Positions 32,940 to 63,999 of a stretch of DNA of 64,000 nt are shown one piece after another. A program made the translations under genes and the position numbers. The number at the start of each line of letters is the position of its first letter. Position 1 is the stretch's first letter. The notes under the pieces are model-generated. The model searched no databases. It saw only the letters and a program-made list of their open reading frames with translations, and had not been told where the DNA came from. The stretch is taken from positions 230,915 through 294,914 of the IMG/VR virus record IMGVR_UViG_3300027621_000003; one strand, written 5' to 3'.

Positions 32940-35150
32940 TTATTCTTGTAATGTTTTTTCAACAACGCTTACTGCCGATAATCCACCTGAAATGATTGTA
33001 TTACAATTATTTAAAGCAATGTAATTAAATGAACCATCTACTTGTACTGTACTTTGGACAGTTGTAGCACAACCAGATATACTAGCATCGGTTATGGTAA
33101 CTTTATTATATACATCAATTGTTAATGTATCTGCGTTTGTAACAGAAACACTTGCCGTTGAATCTGTTACCGTTGTTTCAATATCATTAGGTGAACAATA
33201 AGGTCTTAATGTTGAACTACTTGTTGTACCACCTGATGTTATAGCTATTGGACTACCATTTTTATAAATGGTAATTTCAGTTAAATTATTGTTTCCATCA
33301 CCAGGTTTGTAAAGTTCAAAATTTACATTAATGTCAAACGACATTGCTATTGTTATTCCACTAGGAATATTATTACAATTTAATTCCCAAATTTGATTTT
33401 TAGATTGTATATACGGACTATCAATTTGTGTTTGATTTGTTGTTTGTGTAAATTGTAATGTTGTTGTAACATTTTGATTTAAATTTCCAACAGTAGTATT
33501 TTGTGTTATATATAACCCGGTCACAACATCTTTAACATAAACAGTGTAAACACCAGGATTTAAATCATAGAAATAAGATGTAGTTCCTGTTGTGGTACCA
33601 CTATTAATTGAATATATATAATTACCTGAACCACCGTATGGTTGAATTGCAATTGTTCCATCTGCGGTTGTATCACAAGTGGCTGATGATGTAACTACAG
33701 ACATATTAAGTGGTAAATACGCAGGACAATTACCTGTAACCATGTTCAATGAACTAATCTGACTACTTCCGTTTATAATCCAATTACTTAACGGTGGTAT
33801 TGAAGTCGTATTTGAACTTGGGTAAGCGTCTACTGATAAACCTTGAATTGTCCAACCTGATAATGCCGAGTTACTTAATACCAATATTTCACCCGAACCA
33901 TTTGTTATTGGTGATGAATAAGTTGCCGCTGTCCAAGCGGGTTTACTATTAATTGTTGAATAATAATTAAATTGATATTGGTATTGTTGATTATTAGTTA
34001 ATGTAAATGTTGCACATATTCCTGTGTATGCCACGGCTGTTGGTGATGGTGTTAATGTTGGTGTTAATGTTGGTGTTGGCGTTGGTGTTATTCCAATTAT
34101 TGTACATGTTGTAGATGCTGTAAAATCACCATAATAATCTGTGACAATTGCAGAATATGTTCCAGGTGTTACACCACTAATTGTGGTAGTATCAACAACA
34201 CCATTACTCCAAACTATACTATATGGTGATGTACCACCAGTTATAAACAAACTCATAGTTCCAAAACCACTAACAACAACAGGATTTGTTACACTGCAAA
34301 CCACACCCAATGGAAACAAAGTAATAACATTACACTCATTTTTTACAATAGCTCTTGTTGTTGTAGTTGTTGTATAAGTTGGTGTTGGTGTTAAACCAAA
34401 AGTTTTAGTTGGTGTTGGAGTTGCGGTACGTGTTGGTGTAATACTCGGTGTATTTGTTGGCGTAGGTGTCAATGTGGCTGTAACACTTGGCGTTGGTGTT
34501 GGTGTTGGACACGGTATTGCTGATTTACAAAAAGTACAATTTTGATAAGTTGGGTATTCAAAAGATGATGTTATTGTTGAAGCGGATGTTGTATTAGTTA
34601 ATGAATAACATTTATCATTATAAACAACAGTATTACCAAAAGGATAAACAAAATTTGATGGTATTATATTAAATGTTAATATATCTGTTGAGTCGCAACA
34701 ATTTGTAAATGTAACCGCAGAGTATTGAGTAGTTCCCGTATTTAAATTCAAACATTTGATACAATTTTCATACGTAGTTAATGATGTGTAAACATTATCA
34801 TTTGTTGGTCTACTACTAACATATTCCCAACAATCACCATCATATAAAATAACAGTATTTAGTGCCGGCACAATACTTGCTGGAACAGTTATTATCGCAA
34901 GTTCACTTGACGTACAATTTTGAATTTGAAGTCCAATTAAATTATCAGAAATACAATCATCACAATTACCATAACCATTAAATGTTACATCAGCAACTGG
35001 TATTAAAAAACTTGCAACTTCAGTGTCAATCCAACATAATCCATCATAATAAGCAATATCTCCAGGATTGAAGAATACATCATTATATTGTAATATCTGT
35101 GTTTGATTTATATTATTACAATTACGGAATATGTTAGTTTGAATTGCCAT
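32940..35150 (-). CDS. Virion structural protein with Cys-rich repeats, Thr-Pro linkers and SprB-like repeats
   Basis: Three N-terminal modules ending YxxCxxC, two PTPT tracts, two 'GG..PY.Y.W/S..G..PG.Y.V.V.D' repeats. Confidence 0.7.
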   Translation of the reverse strand: MAIQTNIFRNCNNINQTQILQYNDVFFNPGDIAYYDGLCWIDTEVASFLIPVADVTFNGYGNCDDCISDNLIGLQIQNCTSSELAIITVPASIVPALNTVILYDGDCWEYVSSRPTNDNVYTSLTTYENCIKCLNLNTGTTQYSAVTFTNCCDSTDILTFNIIPSNFVYPFGNTVVYNDKCYSLTNTTSASTITSSFEYPTYQNCTFCKSAIPCPTPTPTPSVTATLTPTPTNTPSITPTRTATPTPTKTFGLTPTPTYTTTTTTRAIVKNECNVITLFPLGVVCSVTNPVVVSGFGTMSLFITGGTSPYSIVWSNGVVDTTTISGVTPGTYSAIVTDYYGDFTASTTCTIIGITPTPTPTLTPTLTPSPTAVAYTGICATFTLTNNQQYQYQFNYYSTINSKPAWTAATYSSPITNGSGEILVLSNSALSGWTIQGLSVDAYPSSNTTSIPPLSNWIINGSSQISSLNMVTGNCPAYLPLNMSVVTSSATCDTTADGTIAIQPYGGSGNYIYSINSGTTTGTTSYFYDLNPGVYTVYVKDVVTGLYITQNTTVGNLNQNVTTTLQFTQTTNQTQIDSPYIQSKNQIWELNCNNIPSGITIAMSFDINVNFELYKPGDGNNNLTEITIYKNGSPIAITSGGTTSSSTLRPYCSPNDIETTVTDSTASVSVTNADTLTIDVYNKVTITDASISGCATTVQSTVQVDGSFNYIALNNCNTIISGGLSAVSVVEKTLQE

Positions 35151-35152
35151 TA

Positions 35153-35362
35153 TTAATTACATTCTGTTATAATACAATCATTTACATCAACAACTTTTAC
35201 ACACAATGAACTTTCTGAATCCAAAGGTGCTGGTACGTCAAAAACATAGGGTGTTGAGCTAATTGTTGCTATATAAACACAATTGTTTACGGAACCGTCA
35301 CAAATATATACGTCATATGGTGATGTTCCTGTTAAAGAGTTTATAGTTACTTGTATTGCCAT
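35153..35362 (-). CDS. Small beta-rich structural protein
   Basis: 69 aa between structural genes; TATTTATA at 35367-35374. Confidence 0.65.
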   Translation of the reverse strand: MAIQVTINSLTGTSPYDVYICDGSVNNCVYIATISSTPYVFDVPAPLDSESSLCVKVVDVNDCIITECN

Positions 35363-35366
35363 GGTA

Positions 35367-35374
35367 TATAAATA
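35367..35374 (-). promoter_or_regulatory. Putative late promoter motif TATTTATA
   Basis: 4 nt upstream of ATG 35362. Confidence 0.55.
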
Positions 35375-35375
35375 T

Positions 35376-37679
35376 TTAATTGGTTGGGGTTGGTGTTGGA
35401 GTTTTAGTTACCGTAGGGGTTGGAGTTTTAGTTACCGTAGGGGTTGGAGTTTTAGTTACCGTAGGTGTTGGAGTTTTAGTTACCGTAGGTGTATTAGTTG
35501 GTGTTGGAGTTACTGGATAATTTTCACATGTTGAACAATCTCCATACCAACTATCAACAACACTACTAGTTGCATTTGGTGATACAGTACTTACACCTAT
35601 ATAAGTGTAACAACTTTGAGTTCCATTTATGGTCATATTATATGCGTAGTTAGTTATTAAATCTACATCAACAAATATATTTGATGGTTCCAAATAATAC
35701 ACATCATTAGTATTACATTCTTGGAATTGGTATGTCTGACCAGGACATACAAATACAGTTTCAACTAAAGTATATGTAACATCACCACTAACAGGTAAAC
35801 CACGGTTTGTTGTTGTAGTTGTAGTTATTCCATTAGTTGTTGTAGTTGTTGTATATGAACTAAAACTGATACTTCCACCCACACCAATACATGGGTTGGC
35901 GGTTGTTGTAGTTGTAGTATAGGCACTAAATGTAACATCTATAGATGTTGCTGAACAAGGAATTGTTGTTGTAGTAGTTGTTGATACATCACAATCAAAA
36001 TAAGCCTCAAAATCAAATATGTTACAAGGATTTGTTGTTGATGTTGTTGTAACACAAGTTCCTGAACTAAATAACTCATCACATAAATCAGGACATATTG
36101 ATGAGTTTGGTATTTTACCGTGAAGAATACAAGAACCGTCTAATGCTGAACTTAAACACCACGAAGTTGTGCCAGTACTATAATATATAAAACCAGTATC
36201 ACCTGTATAATAAACTCTTTCATTATGAGTACCAGCAGAATAATAAGTTCCATCATATAATTCTGTTGTTGGAAAATATGTTAAGACACAATATTCTTCG
36301 ACAGGACATAAATTCCAACCTGCCGATGGTGTTAATGATGGTGTAGGTGTCTGTGTTGGTGTAGGTTGGACTGTGGCTGATGGTGCGGGACATTCACCAA
36401 TTAAAGTTACATAAACACCTTCAGGAGCAATTACCGAATTCTCACAAGCACATAATGATACTGTTGTATTAGGAAGTATAAAAAATTCCCTAAATTGACC
36501 ATAACAATCAATGTGGTCAACGTAAACATCAAGCGAGTTACTATTGAACAACAAATATTCTAAACATGTACAATCCAATACAGGACCTGTTGGTGTTGGT
36601 GTAGGCGTAGGACATGTTGGACAATACCCATCTTCACATGAAGATTGTTCTGTAAAAACAACACCAACACCTGAATAATTTTCACCAATTGATTCGTATG
36701 GTATAACTTCGGCACATCCTGTAAAATCAACACTACTTGATATATAAAACGTTTGACCAACTGTTAGTGTTGATGATATTGTATTAAATCTAAAAATATT
36801 AGTAGCATCACAACAATCTCTAAATGTATAGATATTAAATGCGTAATCTGTAGGTGTTACAGATGGTGTATTGGTATTGGTTGGTGTTATTGATGGTGTA
36901 TTTGTATTTGTTGGTGTTATTGATGGTGTAACTGTTGGTGTTTCAGTATTGGTTGGTGTTACCGTAGGTGTAACTGTTGGTGTTTTGGTTAATGTTGATG
37001 TTACCGTAGGTGTAACTGTTGGTGTTTTGGTTAATGTTGGTGTTACCGTAGGTGTAACTGTTGGTGTTTCAGTATTGGTTGGTGTTACCGTAGGTGTAAC
37101 TGTTGGTGTTTGGGTTAATGTTGGAGTTTGTGTTGGAGTTCCCGAATTTGTATTTGTAGGTGTATTTGTGGGTGTTTCTGTATTAGTAGTAGTTGGAGTT
37201 AAAGTAGGTGTTTCTGACTCAGTAGGAGTTGGAGTTAAAGTAGGTGTTGCAGTATTTGTAGGCGTTACTGTTGGCGTAGGTGTTTTTGACTCAGTAGGAG
37301 TTGGAGTTAAAGTAGGTGTTTCTGTATTAGTGGGTGTTGGTGTCGGTGTGTTTAATATTGGTGTTTCTGTATTAGTAGGCGTTACTGTTGGTGTTTCTGT
37401 ATTAGTAGGCGTTACTGTTGGTGTTTCTGTATTAGTAGGTGTAGGTGTTGGTGTGATTGACCCTAAACATTCTATACATCCAGCGTATGGACTTGATACT
37501 GTTGCAATCTCATCTACTATTGGTAAACTACCAATTCCGGTAGATGTATAACAACCTGATGGCGTACTTCCAGTAAACGTTAAAAAATACGCAAATGGTG
37601 GAGGTGACAGTGGAGTACCACTGTATTCAACATCATACGTTATTAATGTATCACATGATGTAATTAATATTGCTGCCAT
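35376..37679 (-). CDS. Mucin-like Thr-Pro-rich virion protein with Cys-rich modules
   Basis: About 200-aa TPTxTPT tract, poly-Thr runs, three Cys modules, C-terminal (TPTVTKTP)n. Confidence 0.75.
35395..35490 (-). repeat. Four tandem 24-nt coding repeats (TPTVTKTP)
   Basis: Unit GTTGGAGTTTTAGTTACCGTAGG[G/T] on the plus strand, no spacers. Confidence 0.85.
36850..37450 (-). repeat. Thr-Pro low-complexity coding repeat
   Basis: [13 protein letters not shown]-type units. Confidence 0.9.
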
Positions 37680-37704: not shown

Positions 37705-38685
37705 CTATTTTTGAATTATTTTTTTCATTTCATTTATGTATTTGTAAGTTGTTGACTGTTTATCAACATAATCAAAATACTCAATATCTTTTTCCAAAAG
37801 TTTAATCGGATTATTATTAATATAATCACCCTTAAAAAATAGTGTATTTTTAAGGTTGTCAGTTACGCCAGCCATGTGTAATATTGGGTTAGTATAACAA
37901 GTATCAATCTTGTCAGTTGCCCAACAAAAATCAAGTTCTTTTGTAATCCTTGTTTCCCTATTCCACCACCACATATTCCATAATACTGACCACATCTCTG
38001 CGGTCCAAAATTGTATTTCACCTGGTGATATTGGATACTTTCGTTGGAATCTCATCAGTTTGTCATAAAGTCCTGTGGATTCTCTAAATATTTTATACCA
38101 CATCTGCCAATCTTGTTTTTTAAAGACATATTGTGCTCCACCTGAGTTTAATTCATTCTTCTTAACAATACTTGGTTCAACACCAACAATGTCACACATC
38201 TCTCTTAATAGTTGTCCTGAATCTAGTTGGGGATGTTTTTCTTTATACCTACCATCACAATCCATAATGTAATTGAAATCTATATATCCACGAGTATTGG
38301 ACATATAGATATAATCATCATTTATAAGATTGCTGAAATCAGGAAGGTAATTAAATACAATGTCAGAGTCATGTAGAAAAAATAACTCTCCTCTTTTTGG
38401 GTCTTCTTTAATCCATTCATATAATAAATAAGGTTTAATACTTGGTATGTAATGTTTTCTTTCACGGTTGTCTATATACCCATGAATATTTTCTGTATAT
38501 TTTTTTAAATATTTTGCACCATCAGATAACTCGGTTGTTTTATTAACCATTGCAAATAAAACGTGAATATTCTCTTTTGGAATACCCAATTCAATAAAAT
38601 TATTTAAATATACTTCACACTGCCAATGAAAATACGGTACATCTGGTTGTGCCGAAACAAATATAAGTTTATCTTTCCAAGTCAT
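37705..38685 (-). CDS. GT-A glycosyltransferase resembling plant HPAT (GT95) / peptidyl-serine galactosyltransferase (GT96)
   Basis: YFHWQ, YIPSIKPYLLYEW, HDSD (DxD), SGG and WTAEMW occur in the order of the SGT1/HPAT motifs as recalled (YFDWQ, YPAINKP..W, LDAD, GG, WISEMY). Confidence 0.65.
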   Translation of the reverse strand: MTWKDKLIFVSAQPDVPYFHWQCEVYLNNFIELGIPKENIHVLFAMVNKTTELSDGAKYLKKYTENIHGYIDNRERKHYIPSIKPYLLYEWIKEDPKRGELFFLHDSDIVFNYLPDFSNLINDDYIYMSNTRGYIDFNYIMDCDGRYKEKHPQLDSGQLLREMCDIVGVEPSIVKKNELNSGGAQYVFKKQDWQMWYKIFRESTGLYDKLMRFQRKYPISPGEIQFWTAEMWSVLWNMWWWNRETRITKELDFCWATDKIDTCYTNPILHMAGVTDNLKNTLFFKGDYINNNPIKLLEKDIEYFDYVDKQSTTYKYINEMKKIIQK

Positions 38686-38901: not shown

Positions 38902-39291
38902 TTAAATAACATTTGTATGATTTCTTCCATCGTTCCAATAACTAACATCACCATACCATGTGAATATCTCATCACCTTTCTTTATTTCTCGATGGGAAAT
39001 AAATTGAAATGTTTTGTTTTCAAGGTTTGATATCCAATACGCATTTGCATTTTCGTGATGATTATAAATCCCACCATAACCTAAAGGAAGTACTTGCTCT
39101 TTCCATTCACCACCTTGTGGCCAATTAAATCTATAATCAATTAATAAAGAAGTTACTTCTCCTTTTTCTATTGGTAAAGTTAAGACAGGACATTCTTCAA
39201 ACACTTCGCCTTCCATAATATCTTCTTTTGCAAAGACCCCCCATCCATGAACGGGACTTTTATCAACATATATTTTTGGATTGTATATCAT
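38902..39291 (-). CDS. SET-domain protein (lysine methyltransferase)
   Basis: SPVHGWGVFA, GxGGIYNHHENAN, EIKKGDEIFTWYG. Confidence 0.9.
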   Translation of the reverse strand: MIYNPKIYVDKSPVHGWGVFAKEDIMEGEVFEECPVLTLPIEKGEVTSLLIDYRFNWPQGGEWKEQVLPLGYGGIYNHHENANAYWISNLENKTFQFISHREIKKGDEIFTWYGDVSYWNDGRNHTNVI

Positions 39292-39294: not shown

Positions 39295-40137
39295 TTACTT
39301 TATTGCTTCACAAATTCCACCTTCGGAATAAGTTTGATATCCTTTGTTGTGAAACCAAGTATAAATCTCATCTTTCTTATCTTGGGATAGGTTGTAGTCT
39401 TCAAATATAATAAAATTAGGTAATAAAACTTTTGTCTCATCAATACCCATAATTAATTGGGCATCTAACCCTTCAACATCAAGGTGTAACCAATCAATGT
39501 GTCCATCACATTCATTTAAAATTAAATCTGTGATGCTAATTGAATCTCGTTTTGTTGAGTTAATTTCTTCTGTTTCCCAATGTCTAATAACATTTTCAAC
39601 TACGGTATTTGTATATCCCGCACCGCCTTCAAAAAATTCAACTTCACCACCATTAGGTGTGATTAAATTTTGAATGGTTTTAACCATTGAATTGTTCTTG
39701 TAATTATTTTTTAATTGATTGTATTGGTTATCTGATGCCTCCACTAAAACAACATTACATTCACGTTTTTGAACAATTGGTACCCACTCACCAAACTCAC
39801 CATCGTGAGTTCCAACAACCAATCCCTTTGGGAATTTACCATTAGACAAAATACCCTTGTTAAACATCCATAAAGACTTATAGAAATGATTTCCATGTTC
39901 CATAATATCCCACACTTTTTTATAAACTAATTTATCCTTGATGTCGTATATTTCAACATCATACATTTCGGTATTTGGGAATGTCGCAAACCAATTGTCA
40001 TTCAAATCGGTTGCCCATTGTTCCTCACCACTTACGTGTTTTTTAATTTTTAATCTTAATGGTAGGTTTTTATTATATTTACTAATCTCATCAACATTAA
40101 CTTTAATACCATCTGAATTGTATGTAACTGTAATCAT
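39295..40137 (-). CDS. N-terminal beta module plus FkbM-like methyltransferase
   Basis: VVGTHDG, VLVEAS, IDWLHLDVEGLD, IIFE. Confidence 0.7.
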   Translation of the reverse strand: MITVTYNSDGIKVNVDEISKYNKNLPLRLKIKKHVSGEEQWATDLNDNWFATFPNTEMYDVEIYDIKDKLVYKKVWDIMEHGNHFYKSLWMFNKGILSNGKFPKGLVVGTHDGEFGEWVPIVQKRECNVVLVEASDNQYNQLKNNYKNNSMVKTIQNLITPNGGEVEFFEGGAGYTNTVVENVIRHWETEEINSTKRDSISITDLILNECDGHIDWLHLDVEGLDAQLIMGIDETKVLLPNFIIFEDYNLSQDKKDEIYTWFHNKGYQTYSEGGICEAIK

Positions 40138-49927: not shown

Positions 49928-49955
49928 GATTTTATTTAAAGTTTTAATGTTGTGT

Positions 49956-56088: not shown

Positions 56089-56158
56089 AACATAATAATA
56101 TACAATATTTAAAAATAACAAATAGACATTTTTTTGTTTTAAACTAACATTAATAATA

Positions 56159-56776: not shown

Positions 56777-58635
56777 TCGTGTTTAATCCCTAAATTATCT
56801 TGGAAATGTTTTTGATTAGTCAACAATCTTTCTTTTTGACTTTCAAATCTAAAATCATTTAATATTTGCAACAAATATTGATAACCTTCTTCAAATCTTT
56901 TTGTCCAAAAACAAGATACTGATAACTCATCATTATTATAATCTCCATACATATTTTCTTGGATGAATAAAATGTATTTTTCTTTTACATTATTAATGTT
57001 TTTGGATTTTGCGGTTTTTAAATACGAATACCCCTTTTCAAACTCACCGATTAAATTACAATATTTTCCAATATGAAAATGTGGTTCCGCTCTATCATTA
57101 CATAACTTTATTGCCACTAACATTTCAGTTTCAATTTTACTTAAATCATAATTAAGTTTCATCATACAAAGAGCAATCCTCATTTGTGATTCAAAAATCT
57201 CTTCAATCCACCCATCATTTAATTTTGTATATAATCGGTACCATTTAATTGCCTCGTCATACATTTCAGAATCTTGATAACTTTGAGCTGTGTAAAAAAC
57301 TGACCTACTATTTAAATTATCTGGGTCCGATAATAAAGTATCAAAAAATTGTTTTTTTAATTTTTCAGCATCATATAAGAATTTATTTGGGTCAAAAGCT
57401 CTTGAACCAATACCTTCTCCTGATACATAATGATTTCTATTTGTAATATCTTTTGTGATAAAAATTCCTTTTTCTTCACATTTAATAGTTGTATGTGCAA
57501 CACCACAAAATCTCCATGTTAATCTGTTATTAAAAATTATTAGAGCTTTCCATTTTATATCACCACGAGTTACGTTCATATAATAAGCATCTTGACCAAT
57601 GTCATCTTTGGTAAACTCTAAACCATTAACCAATAAATCATCAGCATCCAAATGTAAAACATAATCAGCTTTATCTTTAGCCCGTTTCATCATTAAAGTT
57701 TTATTGTGGTCAAATCCAACCCACTTATCAATGTGTAATTCACCAGGTATTCCTTTTTCTTCAAAGAAATTTTTGACAATCTCACACGTCCTATCAGTTG
57801 AGCCTGTATCACACACAACCCAATAGTCAATATGTTTATAAACAGATTCTAATGTGTTCTGAATACAATGTTCTTCATTTTTACACATAGTTGCAAAACA
57901 CATGGTTGGTCCATCTTTTTTGATTTCAACAGGTTCGTTTTTCCAAACTGCGGATGTAACACTATTTTCTTCAGTATCAGGATTTTCTTTAGTATAGTAA
58001 TATAATGCCAATGAAATCCTTGACATACCATTAGGTGTATTCAAGGGATGTGGATGACCGTGATATGTGTCAGCTTCAGTATTGAAAATAACTACACGGT
58101 TAAATAAGGGTTGAATATCTTGAACCATTGTTGTCATATCTTTATCCCATAATTGTAATGAACCACCCCATTCTTTATTCCAATCTTTATTAAGATATAC
58201 TAATAGATTTATTCTTCTGTAATTATTAGTTACCGCATGTTTTCTTGAGTCGGCATGAATTGATAATTTACCACCTGATTCAATCTTATGCATCCCACCA
58301 CCTAATAATGTTGGGTCGGCAATTAAACCTTCAATCCCTGTTAATTTTTCTAACATACTAATAACATCAGGTGAATTAAAATAATTCAATATTAATTTGG
58401 TGTTAATTGGTAATGTTGTATCCCCATCATTGTTCCAAGGCGAAAAGAATTTTTTAACTTGATGGTCTTTTGAATAATCACTATTATCCCAACCCCAATT
58501 ATTGTGGTTTCTAAAATCATCAATAACACCATTCAACAATGATGGTGGTAAAAAATTATCAACAACCATGTGTGGAAATGGTTGTGCTTGTCTATACTCG
58601 TTAATTTCTTTTTCGGTTACTGTAAAATTTATCAT
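56773..58635 (-). CDS. Fusion: 2OG-Fe(II) oxygenase + GT2 glycosyltransferase + TPR
   Basis: IHAD...YHGHP...RISLALY; MCKNEEH..CDTGSTD..HLDADD; FYTAQSY..AIKWY..RAEP TPR-like helices. Confidence 0.85.
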   Translation of the reverse strand: MINFTVTEKEINEYRQAQPFPHMVVDNFLPPSLLNGVIDDFRNHNNWGWDNSDYSKDHQVKKFFSPWNNDGDTTLPINTKLILNYFNSPDVISMLEKLTGIEGLIADPTLLGGGMHKIESGGKLSIHADSRKHAVTNNYRRINLLVYLNKDWNKEWGGSLQLWDKDMTTMVQDIQPLFNRVVIFNTEADTYHGHPHPLNTPNGMSRISLALYYYTKENPDTEENSVTSAVWKNEPVEIKKDGPTMCFATMCKNEEHCIQNTLESVYKHIDYWVVCDTGSTDRTCEIVKNFFEEKGIPGELHIDKWVGFDHNKTLMMKRAKDKADYVLHLDADDLLVNGLEFTKDDIGQDAYYMNVTRGDIKWKALIIFNNRLTWRFCGVAHTTIKCEEKGIFITKDITNRNHYVSGEGIGSRAFDPNKFLYDAEKLKKQFFDTLLSDPDNLNSRSVFYTAQSYQDSEMYDEAIKWYRLYTKLNDGWIEEIFESQMRIALCMMKLNYDLSKIETEMLVAIKLCNDRAEPHFHIGKYCNLIGEFEKGYSYLKTAKSKNINNVKEKYILFIQENMYGDYNNDELSVSCFWTKRFEEGYQYLLQILNDFRFESQKERLLTNQKHFQDNLGIKHD

Positions 58636-58640: not shown

Positions 58641-59888
58641 TTATTTATAAATGTAGTTTAATATTTCTTCTTCACTATGAAATTTCCTAATAAAAATGTG
58701 GTTTTGAAATTTTTGTGAACAATTCTCATCTTCAACCCAATTCCAATCATGTTTACCCATTTCTATTATTTTTTCATGTATTTGTTTATCGTAATAATCT
58801 CTAATTAATCTTGCTCTTCGGTTTATATCAATTGAGTTATTATCAACAGTAGTGTTTTTATTATTATATTGTATGTATAATACTTTTTTTACATGAATTA
58901 TTTTTGTATTAAGAAATGTCCTTATAATTAATTCCAAATCATCAGCAATTGGTGTATTTTTATTATGTCCACCAATTTCAAGATATTTTTTTCTTTCCCA
59001 CATTCTTACGTGGTCAGGCATACTAATATTGAATCTAATAGTTAACGGATTTATATCAGGGTACCAATGAGCAATTAAATCTTTACCATCAACATTTGTC
59101 CAACTATGACCAGCATATCCAAAATCAAAGTAATTATCATATCTTCCATACCAATCACCTGAAACATTATTGTCATACGTTCTCATATTACCATCCTCAT
59201 ACATTTCACACACATCACTATAAAGAAATCCGGCATCAGGATATTGTAAAATTGCATCATTTGATATTTCTAAACATTGTGATGTTAAAACATCATCATG
59301 GTCTAATTCAACTAACCAATCTCCATCACATAACATAGCAACCCTATTTTTAGCCAATCCAATATTACCACCACTTAATGGATATATTCTATGTGGTTTA
59401 ACACGATAATCTTTATCTTTGAGACCCATTAAAATGTTCCAAGTATTGTCATCAGGTGAATCATCAACAATAACCCATTCCCAATCAGTAAAAGTTTGAT
59501 TTACAATACTTTCATAAGTTCTTAAAATTCTTTCACCCGTATTGTAAGTTGGTGTGAATATTGAAAATTTTGGTCTTATATTTTGACAATTAATAAAAGT
59601 TCCTTGTTTAACAACAACATTAGCCAATTCAATATCACCAATAATATTATCATAATGAATATATTTTGAATTTAATATTTTATCATTAATTGTTATTTTT
59701 TTACCAAACGAAATTATTAAATCGGGCAAGTACTTTGAATAATCTTGGATTAGATTCTCAATATTTTCCAATGAATAAATTGTAACATATTCCAATAAAT
59801 TTTCCTCACAATAAATGTGTGATTGCAATTCATTAATACCTTTTCTATCCCAATTGTATATAATTGCACTGGGTTTTTTTGTTCTCAT
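58641..59888 (-). CDS. GT2 glycosyltransferase with N-terminal extension
   Basis: FSIFTPTYN, IVDDSPD, ELDHDD, ADDLEL. Confidence 0.88.
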   Translation of the reverse strand: MRTKKPSAIIYNWDRKGINELQSHIYCEENLLEYVTIYSLENIENLIQDYSKYLPDLIISFGKKITINDKILNSKYIHYDNIIGDIELANVVVKQGTFINCQNIRPKFSIFTPTYNTGERILRTYESIVNQTFTDWEWVIVDDSPDDNTWNILMGLKDKDYRVKPHRIYPLSGGNIGLAKNRVAMLCDGDWLVELDHDDVLTSQCLEISNDAILQYPDAGFLYSDVCEMYEDGNMRTYDNNVSGDWYGRYDNYFDFGYAGHSWTNVDGKDLIAHWYPDINPLTIRFNISMPDHVRMWERKKYLEIGGHNKNTPIADDLELIIRTFLNTKIIHVKKVLYIQYNNKNTTVDNNSIDINRRARLIRDYYDKQIHEKIIEMGKHDWNWVEDENCSQKFQNHIFIRKFHSEEEILNYIYK

Positions 59889-59893: not shown

Positions 59894-60478
59894 TTATCTT
59901 TCGGTATCAAAAAAGAATGTTTGAAATAATCTACCATCTTCTAAGTTTCTACCAAAATAATCTAATGATGTATGAAAATAATCCGCTCTATACAATACCA
60001 ATCTATTAAACTTGTTTCCCAACATATCAGTCATTTCCCATTTGGTCATGTCTTGGGAATCCAAATATAATCTATCCAACATTTCAAAATCATAACCCCC
60101 ATCACTTTTTAAAGGTGCGGTATGTATACCAGTTTCTCTATGTCTGAATAAACCTGTTCCTGAACTAATAGGTGCGTTTGGTGTTAAAAAACAAACGCCA
60201 GCCCAACTTGTTGTTTGGTCAGCATGCATCCAACTTTTGTCTCGTTGTGTTGCATATTGAAAAGCTCCATTATATTCTTCAGTTGACCATTTTGTTATTT
60301 TACCACCAGCAAAAAATACAATATCTTGTATTAGGTTAACAACACTTTCATTATAAAATGGTTTAGTCCTAAATCCAGGATAATTACCAATCACATTAAA
60401 TTCTTGTTGTAATGCAAATTCTCTCGTTTCGTGTGGGTCATTATAAAAATCATCCACAATTATTGAAGATATAACCAT
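59894..60478 (-). CDS. DUF6445-like 2OG-Fe(II) oxygenase
   Basis: IVDDFY, YPG, MHAD, WAGV, NRLVLY..YFH, RLFQ. Confidence 0.75.
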   Translation of the reverse strand: MVISSIIVDDFYNDPHETREFALQQEFNVIGNYPGFRTKPFYNESVVNLIQDIVFFAGGKITKWSTEEYNGAFQYATQRDKSWMHADQTTSWAGVCFLTPNAPISSGTGLFRHRETGIHTAPLKSDGGYDFEMLDRLYLDSQDMTKWEMTDMLGNKFNRLVLYRADYFHTSLDYFGRNLEDGRLFQTFFFDTER

Positions 60479-60479: not shown

Positions 60480-61067
60480 TTATCTGTATTGTCCTCCTCC
60501 GACCCACAAAACTAAACTCTTTCTATTTCCACTTGTGAGTGGAACAACTCTATGTAATAAAAATGATGGGAATACCACAACATTACCTTTTCCTCTTGGA
60601 ATTTTAGTGTGGTCACTTCCAACCATAATTTCCAAATCTCCGCCAACATATTCTTCAGGGTCAGATAATTGGATAGTAATAGATATTTTTCTATGCGAAA
60701 TTTTACCAGGTCCAATATCCAAATGCCAATCATAATGACCACCATTACCTTCGTATTCAGTATATTGAATATTATCAATAATGGAGTTTAAATCAAATTT
60801 CCAAATAGTATTATTTGCCTCAATAACATGAGTCATTATTCGGTCAATAACCCATTCCCATTTAGAATCAAAAGGTAACCATTTAATGTTACTTTTTCTA
60901 AATTTATCAGTATTATCTTCATCAACTACAAGTGCTTTAACAAATGGGTATTCTTTTGCATCTTCAACAATTTTGTCAATTTCGGCTGAAGTAAATCCGG
61001 CATTAAACCAATAATAATTTGTTTGGTTAATGTCTTCTGATGGTAGGAAAATTGGTTTGAGTTCCAT
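60480..61067 (-). CDS. PKHD-type (prolyl-hydroxylase-like) 2OG-Fe(II) oxygenase
   Basis: YDWHLD, RKISITIQL, GGDL, FPSFLLHRV, RKSLVLW. Confidence 0.9.
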   Translation of the reverse strand: MELKPIFLPSEDINQTNYYWFNAGFTSAEIDKIVEDAKEYPFVKALVVDEDNTDKFRKSNIKWLPFDSKWEWVIDRIMTHVIEANNTIWKFDLNSIIDNIQYTEYEGNGGHYDWHLDIGPGKISHRKISITIQLSDPEEYVGGDLEIMVGSDHTKIPRGKGNVVVFPSFLLHRVVPLTSGNRKSLVLWVGGGQYR

Positions 61068-61348: not shown

Positions 61349-62035
61349 TTAGTTAACTGTTACTGCAAAATATAATCCTGTAAATCCTAAATAGGCGGCA
61401 ACATCTTCTGTTCCAGAACCAGTTGAGGTAAATGTAGTTCCTCCAGGACCTGCATTTACTGTACCACTACTAACTTTAGCATTTCCATTTATACTGATGT
61501 TACAAGTACCACCAGCAAATGTCGGAGATAACCCATTAATTATAACTTTCCAATATCCTCTAAAAATAATAGGGTCATTAGTTGTACTAGCTTGAAGGGC
61601 GCCAGTGCTGCCAGGGGCATTAACAACTCCAGTATTTGCTTGAAGATACATATACGTAATAGAATCGTCATATAATTCAACAGTAACATCAATTTCATTA
61701 TCTACGGGAAATGGTGGTGGGGGGGTAGATACTAAATTATTAACTACATCTAATGTTACTTGATAAGTAGAGTTATCATAAAAATATGTTACTCCTTTTA
61801 AATCGTCCATATCATCAGGGTTGCCAACCGCATTTGTCTCATAAATTCTATTTAAACCCGAATTTTCACCTTTTCCATACGCATTATACGAAATTGAGTT
61901 GCTTCCATTGGGTCCCGCAAAATAAGAATAAAAACTAATATCATTTAAACTAACAACTCCACTACCGGGGTATCCTCCGTTAGCTTCACCATATATATTA
62001 TTTGCTAATGCAATATTTGTTGTTGGAATTGCCAT
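61349..62035 (-). CDS. Probable virion/fibre-associated beta-rich protein
   Basis: 228 aa, G/N/T-rich, TAATG-coupled to the fibre gene. Confidence 0.55.
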   Translation of the reverse strand: MAIPTTNIALANNIYGEANGGYPGSGVVSLNDISFYSYFAGPNGSNSISYNAYGKGENSGLNRIYETNAVGNPDDMDDLKGVTYFYDNSTYQVTLDVVNNLVSTPPPPFPVDNEIDVTVELYDDSITYMYLQANTGVVNAPGSTGALQASTTNDPIIFRGYWKVIINGLSPTFAGGTCNISINGNAKVSSGTVNAGPGGTTFTSTGSGTEDVAAYLGFTGLYFAVTVN

Positions 62036-63999
62036 TACTCTTTATTAATTTGTTTTTTAAGTTCTTTTACTTCATTTGAAAGTTCTTTAATCGCTTCAAT
62101 TAATACTGCTGTTAATTTTTCGTATTTAACTGCTTTGTATCCATTATCACGAGTAGTTACAATTTCAGGGAATACTTTTTCAACTTCTTGAGCGATTACA
62201 CCAATATCATGTCCTTCATTTTCATGAATTCCTACCATTGGTATCCAATCAAATTCATATCCACCTAATTGATTTATTTTACTTAAAGCTCCTTCAATTA
62301 ATACTTTATCAGCCTTTAATCTTTCATCTGAAGAATAGAATGCTATTACATCATTAGTTGCTCTAATTAAACCTGCGGTTGTTGGTGAACTTGTACCTAC
62401 ACCCAACGCTCCTGTCAAACTAACAGTGGTACCATTATCTGTAATTGAACTATCACCAATAGTGGTTGTGCTTGTAAATTTAACAACTCTGTTGTTTGTT
62501 CCTGATACTGAAGCTCCTGATGCACCTTGTGCTCCTTGAGGTCCTCCCGCTCCTTGTGCTCCTGTTGAACCTGTACCAGTTGCTCCTTGAGCTCCTTGTG
62601 GTCCTCCAGGTCCTTGTGGTCCAAGAGCTCCTTGAGCTCCCGCTGGTCCTTGAGGTCCCAATGGTCCTGTCGCTCCTTGTGCTCCTGTTGGTCCTGTAGC
62701 TCCTTGTGGTCCTTGAGGTCCCAATGGTCCTGTCGCTCCTTGTGCTCCTGTACCTCCAACAGCTCCTTGTGCTCCTTGGAATCCTTGAGGTCCTGGAGGT
62801 CCTATTGCTCCTTGTGCTCCTACAGGTCCTGGTGCTCCTGTTGAACCAGTAGCTCCTTGTGCTCCTACAGGTCCTTGAGGTCCTAATGGTCCTACCGCTC
62901 CTTGAGCTCCTGTTGGTCCTTGTGGTCCTGCTGGTCCTTGAGGTCCCAATGGTCCTACCGCTCCTTGTGCTCCTGTTGGTCCTTGAGGTCCCAATGGTCC
63001 TACTGCTCCTTGTGCTCCTGTTGGTCCTTGTGGTCCTAATGGTCCTACCGCTCCCTGAGCTCCTGTTGCTCCTACCGCTCCTTGAGCTCCCTGAAGTCCT
63101 GGTGCTCCCTGAGGTCCTAACGCACCTTGTGCTCCCTGAGGTCCCAATGGTCCTACAGCACCTTGTGCTCCTACCGGTCCTGGTGCTCCCTGTGGTCCTA
63201 CCGCTCCTTGTGCTCCTACCGGTCCTTGTGGTCCTAATGGTCCTACCGCTCCTTGAGCTCCTGTTGGTCCTTGTGGTCCTACCGCTCCTTGAGCTCCTAC
63301 CGGTCCTGTTGGTCCTTGTGGTCCTAATGGTCCTACCGCTCCTTGAGCTCCTGTTGGTCCTTGAGGTCCCAATGGTCCTACCGCTCCTTGAGCTCCTGTT
63401 GGTCCTTGTGGTCCTACCGCTCCTTGAGCTCCTGTTGGTCCTTGTGGTCCCAATGGTCCTACTGCTCCTTGTGCTCCTGTAGCTCCTACCGCTCCCTGAG
63501 CTCCCTGAAGTCCTGGTGCTCCCTGAGGTCCTATCGCTCCTTGAGCTCCTTGTGGTCCTAACGGTCCTACCGCTCCTTGAGCTCCTACCGGTCCTGGTGC
63601 TCCCTGTGGTCCTACCGCTCCCTGAGCTCCCTGAGGTCCCAATGGTCCAGTAGCTCCTTGTGCTCCCTGAGGTCCCAATGGTCCAGTAGCTCCTTGTGCT
63701 CCCTGAGGTCCCAATGGTCCAGTTGCTCCTTGTGCTCCTGTAGCTCCTACCGCTCCCTGAGCTCCCTGAGGTCCAGTTGCTCCTTGTGCACCCTGAGGTC
63801 CTAATGGTCCTACCGCTCCCTGAGCTCCTTGAGGTCCAGTTGCTCCTTGTGCTCCAGTAACACTAATACCTGAAGAACCTGATGTTCCCGAAGAACCTGA
63901 AGAACCACTTGAACCTGAAGTTCCGCTAGTTCCTGATGAACCACTTGAACCTGATGTTCCTGAACTTCCACTTGAACCCGATGTTCCTGAAGAACCTGA
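62035..63999 (-). CDS. Collagen-like tail fibre with C-terminal peptidase S74 intramolecular chaperone (partial; start lies beyond the window)
   Basis: Frame stays open from 63714 to the window edge; Gly-X-Y repeats; SSDERLK...[12 protein letters not shown]...[14 protein letters not shown]. Confidence 0.9.
62510..63855 (-). repeat. Collagen Gly-X-Y repeat (about 150 triplets; [15 protein letters not shown])
   Basis: 9-nt periodic coding repeat with one short interruption near the C-terminal end. Confidence 0.92.
63871..63999 (-). repeat. Gly-Ser-Ser / Gly-Thr-Ser triplet repeat
   Basis: [16 protein letters not shown]... continuing to the window edge. Confidence 0.9.

What the first reader, a model, noticed from the sequence alone, without database searches (positions are those of the whole stretch)
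32940..63999. Candidate phage-encoded, extensin-like protein O-glycosylation pathway for the virion
Seen in sequence: late structural proteins with long Thr-Pro tracts (32940..37679) and a fibre with Gly-Ser/Thr and collagen repeats (62035..63999) bracket a ~23-kb enzyme cluster. It holds an HPAT/SGT-like transferase directly beside the Thr-Pro protein, three 2OG-Fe(II) hydroxylases, a furanose (UGM-type) mutase, two AAH/TibC-type protein heptosyltransferases, and several GT2/GT4 enzymes, O-methyltransferases and acetyltransferases. Established: plant/algal hydroxyproline-rich glycoproteins are built by prolyl 4-hydroxylase, then GT95 HPAT (UDP-Araf donor) and GT96 SGT; AAH/TibC glycosylate Ser in protein repeats; chloroviruses, mimiviruses and some mycobacteriophages glycosylate their virions. 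Inference: this phage hydroxylates and glycosylates its own virion repeats into a glycan shield or adhesin. I know of no characterised bacteriophage with this eukaryote-like Hyp route.
Basis: partly seen in the sequence, partly recalled or inferred. Interest (0 to 1): 0.9.

Follow-up and report, generated by a model that had tools for sequence, protein, structure and literature searches.

The report
Jumbo-phage virion protein glycosylation island
A ~295-kb phage carries about 22 kb of sugar-modifying enzymes between repeat-rich fibre-like proteins; each enzyme set travels with one kind of repeat, so the phage probably sugar-coats its own surface proteins, but not by the plant-like route first proposed.

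Summary
Two Thr-Pro-tract proteins and a collagen/Gly-Ser fibre bracket about 22 kb of soluble glyco-enzymes. These include two PF13640 dioxygenases, one DUF6445, a UGM-like mutase, two Aah/TibC-type transferases, GT2/GT4 enzymes, FkbM methyltransferases and acetyltransferases.

The gene called HPAT/SGT-like (37705-38685) is a confident GT-A fold with an invariant HDxD motif, but it matches no curated family. It belongs to phrog_4417.
- In 11 sampled isolate phages, its homologue lies beside or within about 2.5 kb of capsid, tail or small proteins with poly-Thr tails or tracts.
- Five homologous capsid genes without this neighbour lack the tail.
- In all nine jumbo relatives with readable downstream sequence, the next gene encodes a Thr-Pro-tract protein.

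Its likely target is therefore Thr, which is mucin-like rather than extensin-like.

The hydroxylases, GT2s and UGM travel with collagen-like fibre genes in other viral contigs, never with TP proteins. G-[ST]-[ST] runs occur only where a TibC-like gene is present.

Best reading: three substrate-matched modules glycosylate the phage's own repeat proteins in the cytoplasm. Modification itself, the sugars used and the virion location of the TP proteins remain untested.

The parts
30721..32910 (-). Conserved 729-aa protein of unknown function, last gene of the conserved block GT-A / TP proteins / 729 aa / primase
   Evidence: 50-95% identical in the relatives where it is readable. No Pfam, PHROG, PDB or isolate-phage match. 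The AF2 model is unusable, pLDDT 35.
32940..35150 (-). Thr-Pro-tract protein 2 (736 aa) with Cys-rich modules and SprB-like repeats; candidate glycosylation substrate
   Evidence: Translation. 45 TP/SP-tract residues and one T6 run. Its 84%-identical homologue carries a faint SprB Pfam hit.
35376..37679 (-). Thr-Pro-tract protein 1 (767 aa), starting 25 nt after the GT-A stop; it ends in a (TPTPTVTK)n tail; main candidate substrate
   Evidence: Translation. 243 tract residues in 12 tracts and four T6 runs. DNA tandem repeats. A TP-tract gene follows the GT-A homologue in all nine relatives with readable downstream sequence.
37705..38685 (-). GT-A fold glycosyltransferase (326 aa, phrog_4417), predicted O-glycosyltransferase for Thr-rich tracts
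   Evidence: AF2 pLDDT 95.8. Foldseek top hits are UGGT, glycogenin, WbbM and GT6, and GT8-like viral proteins. H105-D106-x-D108 is invariant. phrog_4417 at 7e-71.
38902..39291 (-). SET-domain protein (possible protein lysine methyltransferase)
   Evidence: PF00856, 47.9 bits.
39295..40137 (-). FkbM-family methyltransferase
   Evidence: PF05050.
40134..40682 (-). Hexapeptide-repeat acetyltransferase
   Evidence: PF00132.
40679..42559 (-). 626-aa protein with an N-terminal DUF6625 domain; function unknown
   Evidence: PF20330, 67.9 bits. 41% identical homologue in L009.
42538..43470 (-). 310-aa protein of unknown function within the cluster
   Evidence: No Pfam, PHROG or NCBIfam hit. Conserved in L009.
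43443..44030 (-). FkbM-family methyltransferase
   Evidence: PF05050.
44053..44835 (-). 260-aa protein of unknown function within the cluster
   Evidence: No family hit. 57% identical in L009.
44852..45427 (-). PglD-like hexapeptide N-acetyltransferase
   Evidence: PF00132 plus a PglD_N hit.
45424..46068 (-). Short DegT/PseC-like aminotransferase (214 aa, only the N-terminal part of the family)
   Evidence: PF01041 profile positions 26-98 of 360. PseC and LegC hits. 77-78% identical at the same length in L009 and L026/27.
46070..47899 (-). Fusion of sugar-1-phosphate nucleotidyltransferase, HAD-IIIA phosphatase and a kinase-like domain; probable supplier of an activated sugar
   Evidence: PF00483 and EcKL. 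TIGR01689, TIGR03992 and TIGR01662.
47896..49002 (-). 368-aa protein of unknown function within the cluster
   Evidence: No significant family hit.
48971..50747 (-). Two FkbM-family methyltransferases (48971-49927 and 49956-50747)
   Evidence: PF05050.
50704..53043 (+). GT4 fused to an Aah/TibC-type O-heptosyltransferase domain (779 aa)
   Evidence: TIGR04414 at 229.7 bits, cut-off 200. TibC 4rap at 2e-40 over residues 431-778. GT4 Pfam hits.
53040..53936 (+). Second, shorter Aah/TibC-like GT9 protein (298 aa)
   Evidence: TIGR04414 at 193.5 bits, just under the cut-off, matching profile positions 85-372.
53924..54310 (+). DUF6165 protein that travels with the TibC-like gene
   Evidence: PF19662. 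62% identical copy near the TibC-like gene in L010.
54293..55537 (-). UDP-galactopyranose-mutase-like flavoenzyme
   Evidence: PDB UGMs 4dsg and 3ute at 4e-23 to 1e-22. Lies just after the GT2-TPR gene in every mapped locus that has it, and occurs within the flanks of about 20 distinct loci.
55537..56121 (-). Methyltransf_24-like methyltransferase
   Evidence: PF13578, 24.1 bits, below its cut-off.
56159..56776 (+). Small GT2-like protein
   Evidence: Weak PF00535 and PF13641 hits. 76-78% identical in L021, L022 and L025.
56773..58635 (-). Fusion of a P4H-like 2OG-Fe(II) dioxygenase (residues 1-235), a GT2 domain (about 236-420) and a TPR-like C-terminus
   Evidence: PF13640 at 67.4 bits and PF00535. 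H127xD129...H192...R206xS208. The GT2 domain is nearest GmaR 22ao and 7msk. 57 viral loci carry relatives.
58641..59888 (-). GT2 glycosyltransferase (415 aa)
   Evidence: PF00535 at 69.1 bits. Syntenic in the collagen module.
59894..60478 (-). DUF6445 protein with HxD...H, probably of the 2OG-oxygenase type
   Evidence: PF20043 at 48.9 bits. Motifs read from sequence. Syntenic.
60480..61067 (-). PF13640 (PKHD/P4H-superfamily) 2OG-Fe(II) dioxygenase
   Evidence: PF13640 at 54 bits. PDB PiuC and Sbal_3634 at 3e-9. H115xD117...H172...R182xS184.
61349..62035 (-). 228-aa protein of unknown function directly after the fibre gene
   Evidence: No family hit.
62035..64000 (-). Collagen-like tail-fibre gene with G-S/T-S runs, 158 GXY triplets and a Peptidase_S74 chaperone domain; its 5' end is cut by the contig end
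   Evidence: Contig-end arithmetic.

Best explanation
The region is an accessory island of a ~295-kb jumbo phage (IMG/VR contig of 294,914 bp; the host is probably a member of Bacteroidota). It encodes soluble enzymes that modify the phage's own repeat-bearing fibre or adhesin-like proteins in the cytoplasm before or during assembly. It works as three substrate-matched modules rather than one pathway.

Module A. The GT-A enzyme at 37705-38685 (phrog_4417) transfers a sugar from a nucleotide sugar onto Thr in the Thr-Pro and poly-Thr tracts of the two proteins encoded directly downstream. This would make mucin-like brushes.

Module B. The collagen-like fibre is modified by the block 60480 (P4H-superfamily dioxygenase), DUF6445, GT2, the dioxygenase-GT2-TPR fusion and the UGM-like mutase. 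The TPR-bearing GT2 recognises the protein. The mutase supplies a furanose donor, probably UDP-Galf. The dioxygenases may hydroxylate X-position prolines (G-P-Q, G-P-T or G-P-L).

Module C. The two Aah/TibC-type transferases glycosylate Ser in the G-S/T-S runs of the fibre. The nucleotidyltransferase-phosphatase-kinase fusion may supply their activated sugar.

The FkbM methyltransferases, acetyltransferases and aminotransferase tailor the sugars.

Shown: enzyme identities, the GT-A fold, absence of membrane segments, and the three co-occurrence patterns. Inferred: that modification actually occurs, the acceptor residues, the sugars, and that the TP proteins are in the virion.
For: Module A:
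- The fold is a confident GT-A with an invariant HDxD motif.
- The gene immediately downstream encodes a TP-tract protein in all nine related jumbo-phage loci with readable downstream sequence (47-79% identity).
- In 11 of 11 sampled isolate phages the homologue lies beside or within about 2.5 kb of a major capsid, major tail, other structural or small protein carrying T5-T12 runs, usually at the C-terminus.
- 18 of 116 ORFs in the first nine of those loci carry T5+ runs, against 4 of 993 in background loci.
- Five homologous capsid genes with no GT-A next to them, including one at 73% identity from the same genus, lack the tail.

Module B:
- In at least 10 distinct viral loci (45-90% identity) a collagen-like ORF lies 0-5 kb upstream, on the same strand, of some or all of: 60480-type dioxygenase, DUF6445, GT2, GT2-TPR, UGM.
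- The dioxygenase domain is either fused to the GT2 or encoded next to it; in L070 the order is reversed.
- PF13640-type genes are present only in loci whose collagen carries X-position Pro.
- The GT2 domain is nearest the flagellin O-GlcNAc transferase GmaR.

Module C:
- TIGR04414 scores above its cut-off and TibC matches at 2e-40.
- G[ST][ST] runs occur only in loci that carry a TibC-like gene (window, L010, L021, L040) and in none of the roughly 50 loci without one.

General: no enzyme has a membrane segment, and there is no flippase, polymerase or initiating phosphoglycosyltransferase.
Against: - There is no biochemical or proteomic evidence for any modification.
- The TP proteins and the 729-aa neighbour have no homologue of known location, so their presence in the virion is unproven.
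- Co-occurrence was counted only within +/-10 kb flanks of metagenomic contigs and is not corrected for shared ancestry. The link between the dioxygenase and X-position Pro in particular separates close relatives from distant ones.
- Y-position Pro, the canonical collagen P4H site, is rare: 6 of 158 triplets.
- The nearest solved relatives of the 60480 protein (PiuC type) have no established protein substrate.
- In four loci with a TibC-like gene the fibre gene is cut off or outside the locus, so the association could not be scored there.
- The TPR assignment rests on reading the sequence only.
Confidence: 0.6

Rival explanations
1. One reading: a single extensin-like route in which the P4H-like dioxygenases hydroxylate Pro in the Thr-Pro tracts, an HPAT-like enzyme (37705) adds a furanose (Araf or Galf) to Hyp, and an SGT-like step and further GTs extend the glycan.
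For: P4H-superfamily dioxygenases, a furanose mutase and a GT beside the TP protein all sit in one 31-kb stretch. The TP tracts contain abundant Pro.
Against: - Homologues of the GT-A work next to poly-Thr tails in small phages, and no hydroxylase is annotated in the flanks fetched there.
- The dioxygenases and UGM co-occur with collagen genes and never with TP tracts.
- The closest relative keeps the GT-A and TP proteins but has Laminin_G_3 genes where the cluster sits here.
- The GT-A matches no curated family, and its nearest folds are GT8, GT24 and GT6.
- There are no Ser-Pro(n) motifs.
Confidence: 0.08
2. The cluster is an auxiliary polysaccharide locus. It makes or remodels a host-cell surface glycan (O-antigen, capsule or teichoic-acid-like) during infection, for example to block superinfection. 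The neighbouring repeat proteins are not its substrates.
For: Nucleotide-sugar enzymes, GT2/GT4, FkbM methyltransferases and PglD/DegT-type enzymes are typical of O-antigen and capsule loci. The cluster has a lower GC content than its flanks, which suggests an acquired island.
Against: - No membrane segment is present in any protein, and there is no flippase, polymerase, ligase or initiating phosphoglycosyltransferase.
- The best-defined GTs belong to protein-glycosylating families (TibC/Aah; GmaR-like).
- There are three independent gene-repeat associations.
Confidence: 0.15
3. The repeats are ordinary unmodified flexible linkers and fibre shafts. The enzymes lie next to them only because both are cargo of the same hypervariable accessory region.
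For: PT linkers and collagen-like shafts are common in phage fibres without any known modification. The region upstream of the GT-A varies among relatives.
Against: The GT-A / Thr-tract adjacency holds across unrelated phage families and hosts, with presence/absence controls. The collagen and TibC associations recur at 40-60% identity in many contigs.
Confidence: 0.12
4. The dioxygenases and GTs hypermodify phage DNA, by base hydroxylation followed by glycosylation.
For: Phage 2OG dioxygenases paired with GTs are known to hypermodify DNA (preprint 10.1101/2023.12.21.572611, listed).
Against: The dioxygenases match PF13640 (P4H type) and not TET/JBP. The fusion partner is a GmaR-like GT2. Synteny is with collagen genes. 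No cytosine methyltransferase or hydroxymethylase lies in the cluster.
Confidence: 0.03

Closest known systems
Mycobacteriophage virion O-glycosylation (Che8-type; Freeman et al. 2023, as cited in PMC12619734)
   Same: Phage-encoded glycosyltransferases act on the phage's own capsid and tail-tube subunits at C-terminal extensions. The phrog_4417 phages show the same layout: Thr-rich C-terminal tails on the major capsid and major tail proteins, with the GT gene inside the structural module.
   Different: The GT family is different and uncharacterised, with no Pfam match. The hosts are Firmicutes and Bacteroidota. In the jumbo phage the tracts are internal Thr-Pro repeats in large multidomain proteins. 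Glycans have not been demonstrated here.
Mimivirus L230 with viral collagen-like proteins (PMC9614988)
   Same: A virus encodes collagen-like proteins together with a single polypeptide that combines a 2OG-Fe(II) hydroxylase with a glycosyltransferase. Relatives of the GT2-TPR part occur in many giant-virus MAG contigs.
   Different: L230 is GT (GLT25D1-like) followed by a PLOD-type lysyl hydroxylase, and it acts on Lys. Here the order is P4H-superfamily dioxygenase, then GT2, then TPR. The repeats contain no Lys (X = Ala/Pro, Y = Gln/Thr/Val). A UGM is attached to the module.
Aah/TibC bacterial autotransporter heptosyltransferases (TIGR04414; PDB 4rap)
   Same: Full-length homology above the equivalog cut-off. 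These are soluble cytoplasmic enzymes that O-glycosylate Ser in repetitive protein sequence.
   Different: No autotransporter is present. One copy is fused to a GT4 domain. The candidate acceptor is a G-S/T-S run in a phage fibre. The donor sugar is unknown.
Plant and algal hydroxyproline-rich glycoprotein pathway (P4H, GT95 HPAT, GT96 SGT1)
   Same: Pro-rich repeats, P4H-superfamily enzymes and a furanose-forming mutase occur in one locus.
   Different: No membership of the GT-A in any curated family could be shown. There are no Ser-Pro(n) motifs. The hydroxylases associate with collagen genes and not with TP tracts. The mutase is a flavin UGM type.
Animal mucin-type O-glycosylation of PTS domains (own knowledge)
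   Same: A GT-A enzyme is predicted to decorate dense Thr/Pro tracts and give an extended brush.
   Different: No homology to GT27 was shown. The process would be cytoplasmic, bacterial and phage-encoded.
GmaR (Listeria flagellin O-GlcNAc transferase) and other modular TPR-plus-GT flagellin glycosyltransferases such as FlmG (PMC7591256, listed)
   Same: A soluble GT joined to a helical-repeat module, which in the known examples binds the protein substrate. The GT2 domain's best PDB match is GmaR.
   Different: The match is weak (E 8e-7 over about 100 residues). The TPR assignment here comes from inspecting the sequence. An extra dioxygenase domain is fused on.

Membership tests
GT95 HPAT / GT96 SGT1 (extensin-type peptidyl-Hyp / Ser glycosyltransferases) | Detectable sequence or fold relationship of the 37705 protein to the family | tested here: inconclusive
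   No Pfam hit for the protein or for any of 33 homologues even at E 10. No PDB sequence hit. The fold is GT-A, nearest GT24, GT8 and GT6. I could not confirm that a GT95 or GT96 model or structure exists in the libraries searched.
GT95 HPAT / GT96 SGT1 (extensin-type peptidyl-Hyp / Ser glycosyltransferases) | Acceptor motif of contiguous Hyp/Pro after Ser (Ser-Pro3-5) | tested here: not met
   The tracts alternate T-P, often with N, V, K, E or S between, and only one SPPP is present.
GT95 HPAT / GT96 SGT1 (extensin-type peptidyl-Hyp / Ser glycosyltransferases) | Obligatory partnership with a prolyl 4-hydroxylase | tested here: not met
   In isolate phages the GT-A homologues sit by poly-Thr tails, and the flanks fetched carry structural and hypothetical genes with no hydroxylase annotated. 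Only L010 among the jumbo relatives has a dioxygenase hit within 10 kb of the GT-A.
Aah/TibC autotransporter O-heptosyltransferases (TIGR04414) | Score at or above the curated equivalog cut-off, with full-length match to TibC | tested here: met
   50704-53043 scores 229.7 bits against 200 and matches TibC 4rap at 2e-40 over residues 28-384 of the chain. 53040-53936 scores 193.5 bits, just below the cut-off, and lacks the first 84 profile positions.
Aah/TibC autotransporter O-heptosyltransferases (TIGR04414) | Autotransporter passenger domain as acceptor, and ADP-heptose as donor | tested here: not met
   No autotransporter is present in the window. The candidate acceptor is the G-S/T-S run. 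The donor could not be tested; no recognisable GmhA or HldE was found, only a nucleotidyltransferase-HAD-kinase fusion.
UDP-galactopyranose mutase | Homology to solved UGMs across the FAD and substrate domains | tested here: met
   E 4e-23 to 4dsg over residues 7-357, and all 23 PDB hits are UGMs. However, the bacterial equivalog TIGR00031 scores 47.8 against a cut-off of 303.75. It is therefore a divergent enzyme, nearer the eukaryotic type, whose substrate is not proven.
Prolyl 4-hydroxylase superfamily (PF13640) | Pfam score above the gathering cut-off and an intact HxD...H...RxS motif | tested here: met
   67.4 and 54.0 bits against a cut-off of 27. Motifs read.
Prolyl 4-hydroxylase superfamily (PF13640) | Peptidyl-proline as the substrate | not testable with these tools
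   The only evidence is a correlation with X-position Pro in neighbouring collagen genes, and this is confounded by relatedness. The nearest structures (PiuC type) have no known protein substrate.
Phage virion O-glycosylation systems (mycobacteriophage type) | GT gene within or beside structural genes whose products carry Ser/Thr-rich extensions | tested here: met
   11 of 11 sampled isolate phages show this, and 0 of 5 control capsid genes do. In the jumbo phages the TP-tract gene follows the GT-A in all nine loci with readable downstream sequence.
Phage virion O-glycosylation systems (mycobacteriophage type) | Glycans demonstrated on virion proteins | not testable with these tools
   Requires mass spectrometry or glycan staining of particles.
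Mimivirus L230-type collagen hydroxylase-glycosyltransferase | Hydroxylase and GT in one polypeptide, encoded in a genome with collagen-like genes | tested here: met
   Domains at 115-214 (PF13640) and 250-334 (PF00535) of the 620-aa protein. A collagen gene lies 3.4 kb upstream here, and upstream on the same strand in at least 10 other loci.
Mimivirus L230-type collagen hydroxylase-glycosyltransferase | PLOD-type lysyl hydroxylase domain acting on Y-position Lys | tested here: not met
   The domain is PF13640, with no PLOD-type match. The 158 triplets contain no Lys among the common residues: Y = Q64, V25, T24, L18, S15, P6.

The most novel reading that the evidence does not exclude
Two readings go beyond what is known.

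1. phrog_4417 is a large, so far uncharacterised family of phage glycosyltransferases that builds mucin-like O-glycan brushes on poly-Thr or Thr-Pro tracts of capsid, tail and fibre proteins. It spans phages of Firmicutes and Bacteroidota, from 36 kb to about 300 kb.

2. The dioxygenase-GT2-TPR fusion, working with the UGM, performs cytoplasmic hydroxylation of X-position prolines in a collagen-like phage fibre, followed by furanosylation of the new hydroxyl. This would be a Hyp-O-glycosylation route in a bacterial virus, shared with giant viruses.

The probability given is for both being true. Reading 1 alone is about 0.65 and reading 2 alone about 0.2.
Probability: 0.15. Interest if true: 0.88.

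Novelty: new variant of a known kind. Interest (0 to 1): 0.72.

Why it matters
Virion glycosylation by phage-encoded enzymes has so far been shown essentially only in mycobacteriophages, where it shields particles from antibodies.

If the phrog_4417 prediction holds, the same strategy is widespread in phages of lactic acid bacteria, enterococci, staphylococci, clostridia and aquatic Bacteroidota. It would also be recognisable from a simple signature: a poly-Thr tail plus an adjacent GT-A gene. That bears on phage therapy (immune recognition, mucus adherence), on dairy phage biology and on annotation, because more than 1,300 protein clusters are currently labelled 'hypothetical'.

The collagen module links jumbo phages to giant viruses through a shared, largely virus-restricted protein-glycosylation toolkit. 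Only two distant hits were found in 185,579 species genomes.

The three enzyme-repeat pairings also give directly testable substrates for enzymes whose acceptors would otherwise be guesswork.

Tried and rejected
1. Reading the 37705 protein as a major capsid protein. I considered this because its homologue occupies a head-module position in small phages and is highly conserved. I rejected it because of the GT-A fold, the invariant HDxD motif, and a separate phrog_840 major head gene upstream.

2. Structure prediction of the conserved 729-aa neighbour, to test whether the block is structural. The model had pLDDT 35 from only seven sequences and was unusable. A profile search of the PDB was empty.

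3. Searches of the two TP proteins and the 729-aa protein against 50,697 isolate phages found no match. Nucleotide similarity to isolate phages was also absent.

4. Sequence-level family assignment of the GT-A via Pfam, NCBIfam-style libraries, and the PDB by sequence and by profile gave nothing.

5. A search for cellular relatives of the GT2-TPR enzyme found none with the single sequence and two distant hits with a profile.

6. Literature searches for poly-threonine tails or O-glycosylation of phage capsid or tail proteins outside mycobacteriophages found nothing relevant in the held library. Freeman et al. 2023 could not be opened.

7. The DNA-hypermodification and host-polysaccharide readings were considered and down-weighted (see the rival explanations).

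8. Assignment of the phage to the 'moraphage' lineage (PMC12619734) is plausible, given DnaJ, predicted Bacteroidota hosts and GTs in the core genome, but it could not be verified.

Full report
**What the window is.** The window is AT-rich, at about 26-35% GC apart from the 51% GC fibre gene. It carries phage replication and takeover genes: primase, exonuclease, an SbcC-like protein, a sigma-70-type factor, DnaJ and a Dam-type methylase. It is identical to the last 64 kb of IMG/VR contig IMGVR_UViG_3300027621_000003, which is 294,914 bp long. It therefore comes from a jumbo phage, and the fibre gene at the window's end is cut by the contig end. No isolate phage is similar at the nucleotide level. 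SprB-like repeats, the TP linkers and a Chryseobacterium phage homologue point to a Bacteroidota host. Membership of the recently described 'moraphages' (PMC12619734) is plausible but unverified.

**Check of the observation.** The two large minus-strand proteins at 35376-37679 and 32940-35150 do carry long Thr-Pro tracts, with 243 and 45 residues in tracts respectively. They are the only two such ORFs in the 64-kb window. The tracts are encoded by 24-72-nt tandem DNA repeats with 86-97% matches for the clearest arrays. The ORF at 62035-63999 has G-S/T-S runs, 158 collagen GXY triplets and a Peptidase_S74 C-terminal domain, and it matches many tail-fibre PHROGs.

- Two PF13640 dioxygenase domains with intact HxD...H...RxS motifs, plus a DUF6445 protein with HxD...H.
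- A flavoenzyme whose 23 PDB matches are all UDP-galactopyranose mutases, the best at 4e-23.
- A GT4-TibC fusion scoring 229.7 bits on the Aah/TibC equivalog model (cut-off 200) and 2e-40 against TibC itself, plus a shorter paralogue at 193.5 bits.
- Three GT2 domains, four FkbM methyltransferases, two hexapeptide acetyltransferases, a short DegT-like protein, a nucleotidyltransferase-HAD phosphatase-kinase fusion and a SET-domain protein.

No protein in the cluster has a membrane-spanning segment.

**The gene beside the TP protein.** The 326-aa product of 37705-38685 matches no Pfam or PDB sequence. This holds even when all 33 aligned homologues are scanned at E 10. It matches phrog_4417 ('unknown function') at 7e-71. 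It has more than 1,300 metagenomic homologues, some on contigs of 200-330 kb. The alignment shows an invariant H105-D106-x-D108 after a beta strand. AlphaFold2 gives a confident model (pLDDT 95.8, pTM 0.92). Foldseek places it among GT-A enzymes: the UGGT catalytic domain, glycogenin, WbbM, GT6, LARGE1 and XXYLT1, at E values from 2e-7 to about 1e-4 and TM-scores of 0.4-0.5. Among viral models it is nearest GT8-like proteins. 'HPAT/SGT-like' cannot be shown.

**What that transferase travels with.** In the jumbo-phage relatives recovered from viral contigs and assemblies (47-79% identity), the gene that starts 25-45 nt after the GT-A stop encodes a protein with long TP tracts in all nine distinct loci whose downstream sequence is readable. 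One to three further TP proteins usually follow, then the conserved 729-aa protein and the primase.

The region upstream of the GT-A varies:
- In L009 and L010 it holds glyco-enzymes.
- In the closest relative (L003-L005) it holds four Laminin_G_3/Gly-rich fibre-like proteins.

The same family occurs at about 20-37% identity in 77 isolate phage records, 36-145 kb long. They infect Lactobacillus, Enterococcus, Staphylococcus/Mammaliicoccus, Lactococcus, Clostridium, Arcanobacterium and Chryseobacterium. I examined 11 of them, and every one has T5-T12 runs in a gene product beside or within about 2.5 kb of the GT-A:
- In R3.3, 4995_1 and MA9V-3 the gene directly upstream is the major capsid gene (R3.3, 4995_1) or an unannotated gene (MA9V-3), and its product carries the runs.
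- In phiFL1A, phiCTP1 and 1706 it is the major tail or major structural protein gene.
- In iLp84, Iacchus and SscS-F1 it is a small protein made largely of (T5-12 x K/A P) repeats.
- In nattely and bIL285 the gene directly upstream has no such run. The poly-Thr tail is on the major tail protein, about 2 kb downstream.

The runs usually form the extreme C-terminus, with endings such as ...KPTTTTTTTQG...TTTTTTTTTTHHD and ...TTTTTTTTTRHD. In the first nine of these loci, 18 of 116 ORFs carry T5+ runs. In unrelated background loci the figure is 4 of 993, and two of those four are the window's own TP proteins.

As a control I took five homologues of the R3.3 capsid protein from phages with no GT-A next to the capsid gene. 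One of them, Bassarid, is 73% identical and from the same genus. All five end about 10-20 residues earlier and have no Thr tail. Tail and transferase have therefore been gained together. No hydroxylase is annotated in the flanks fetched around those small-phage genes. The shared acceptor feature is Thr, often with a neighbouring Pro. This resembles mucin PTS domains and the mycobacteriophage precedent more than extensins.

**What the hydroxylases, GT2s and mutase travel with.** Residues 236-620 of the 620-aa fusion (GT2 plus a TPR-like tail) have relatives in 57 viral-contig loci at 45-90% identity, many from giant-virus MAG bins. Only two distant relatives (31-32% identity) were found in 185,579 bacterial and archaeal species genomes.

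Mapping the window's proteins onto those loci shows a recurrent same-strand order: collagen-like ORF, then after 1-5 kb the 60480-type dioxygenase, DUF6445, GT2 (58641 type), GT2-TPR, and UGM. Loci L021, L023, L026/27, L033, L043 and L073 show this order. Rearranged or reduced versions occur in L040, L053, L058, L068, L070 and L072. None of these loci has a TP-tract ORF. The UGM lies just after the GT2-TPR gene in every mapped locus that has it and is found in about 20 distinct loci, which suggests that this GT uses a furanose donor. The N-terminal dioxygenase domain is fused in five lineages and sits on the other side of the GT2 in L070, which ties the two activities together.

The collagen repeats have X = Ala/Pro and Y = Gln/Thr/Val/Ser. 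Y-position Pro is rare (6 of 158 triplets here) and Lys is absent from the common residues. PF13640-type genes were found only in loci whose collagen has X-position Pro (5-61% of triplets). They were missing from five of the six loci that have a collagen ORF but no such gene, where Pro is 5% or less. This contrast coincides with the split between closer and more distant relatives, so it is a lead and not a test. The GT2 domain's best solved relative is GmaR, which I know as the Listeria flagellin O-GlcNAc transferase. The nearest structures to the 60480 protein are PiuC-type hydroxylases of unknown substrate.

**What the TibC-like genes travel with.** Runs of at least four G-[ST]-[ST] triplets were found only in four distinct loci: the window, L010 (144 triplets), L021 (370) and L040 (334 + 36). 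All four have a TibC-like gene within 10 kb. None of the roughly 50 loci without a TibC-like gene has such a run. In the four remaining TibC-positive loci the fibre gene is cut off or lies outside the locus. DUF6165 and an FkbM gene accompany the TibC-like gene in L010 as they do here.

**Synthesis.** The specific mechanism does not survive, namely an extensin-like chain of P4H, then HPAT, then SGT on the TP tracts. The data fit three modules better:
- The GT-A with Thr tracts.
- The dioxygenase, GT2-TPR and UGM block with collagen repeats.
- The TibC-like enzymes with G-S/T-S runs.

A shared pool of sugar-activating and tailoring enzymes would serve all three. All of them are soluble and therefore cytoplasmic.

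The closest precedents are:
- Mycobacteriophage virion glycosylation, for the logic of module A.
- Mimivirus L230 with viral collagens, for the fused hydroxylase-GT logic of module B (PMC9614988).
- Aah/TibC, for module C.

Each module differs from its precedent in enzyme family, acceptor or both.

**Limits.**
- Nothing here shows that any modification occurs.
- The sugars are unknown.
- The virion location of the TP proteins is inferred only from the small-phage analogy, the SprB-like repeats and the fibre-gene neighbourhood.
- Co-occurrence was scored within 10-kb flanks of metagenomic contigs, without phylogenetic correction.
- The isolate-phage sample is 11 of 77 records.

I rate the overall explanation at about 0.6, module A at about 0.65-0.7, modules B and C at about 0.5 each, and prolyl hydroxylation specifically at about 0.25.

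Noticed in passing
window 38902-39291 (-): A SET-domain protein (PF00856, 47.9 bits) lies directly upstream of the GT-A gene. It may be a protein lysine methyltransferase, which would be another protein-modifying enzyme in the island. The (TPTPTVTK)n tail of the neighbouring protein contains Lys.
   Followed up: no
window 30721-32910 (-): This 729-aa protein is the most conserved gene of the block (50-95% identity in relatives, with many invariant residues). It has no Pfam, PHROG, PDB or isolate-phage match, and its AF2 model failed (pLDDT 35).
   Followed up: partly
window 64000 (= contig position 294914): The window ends exactly at the end of the IMG/VR contig, so the collagen-like fibre gene lacks its 5' end. 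A second contig (IMGVR_UViG_3300027772_000006, 232,874 bp) is identical across this region and ends at the same place, which hints at a genome terminus or an assembly break inside the repeats.
   Followed up: partly
window 45424-46068 (-): The DegT/PseC-like protein is only 214 aa and covers only the N-terminal part of the aminotransferase family. It is nevertheless conserved at 77-78% identity and the same length in L009 and L026/L027, so it does not look like a recent pseudogene.
   Followed up: partly
L072:4434-9755 (-), contig of 473,558 bp: One neighbour of a GT2-TPR homologue is a 1,773-aa protein combining methyltransferase, GT2, GT4, FkbM and GT17 domains, a giant-virus-style multi-enzyme. 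Many relatives of the module sit in contigs labelled as giant-virus MAGs. I did not resolve whether these are true giant viruses or mis-binned jumbo phages.
   Followed up: partly
L070:10001-11945: The dioxygenase domain lies after the GT2-TPR part instead of before it. This is independent evidence that the two activities belong together.
   Followed up: no
window 40000-50000: The sugar-tailoring half of the cluster has the lowest GC content in the window (26-28%, against 30-35% in the flanks), as expected for acquired cargo.
   Followed up: no
window 9253-10629 (-), 11687-12631 (-), 20301-21101 (-): The phage also encodes a leucine-rich-repeat protein, a full DnaJ (J, zinc-finger and C-terminal domains) and a sigma-70-family factor. 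These features match those reported for the 'moraphage' lineage of Bacteroidota jumbo phages.
   Followed up: partly
L089 (Lactococcus phage 1706) and L088 (bIL285): The poly-Thr tails end in near-identical short caps (…T9-10 HHD or RHD) on different structural proteins of one phage. This looks like a portable C-terminal glycosylation tag.
   Followed up: partly
L003:1-9393 and L004: In the closest relative, four 750-870-aa proteins with Laminin_G_3, Gly_rich_2 or SUEL-lectin domains occupy the place where the enzyme cluster sits in this phage. The site upstream of the GT-A is thus a hot spot for swapping surface or adhesin cargo.
   Followed up: no
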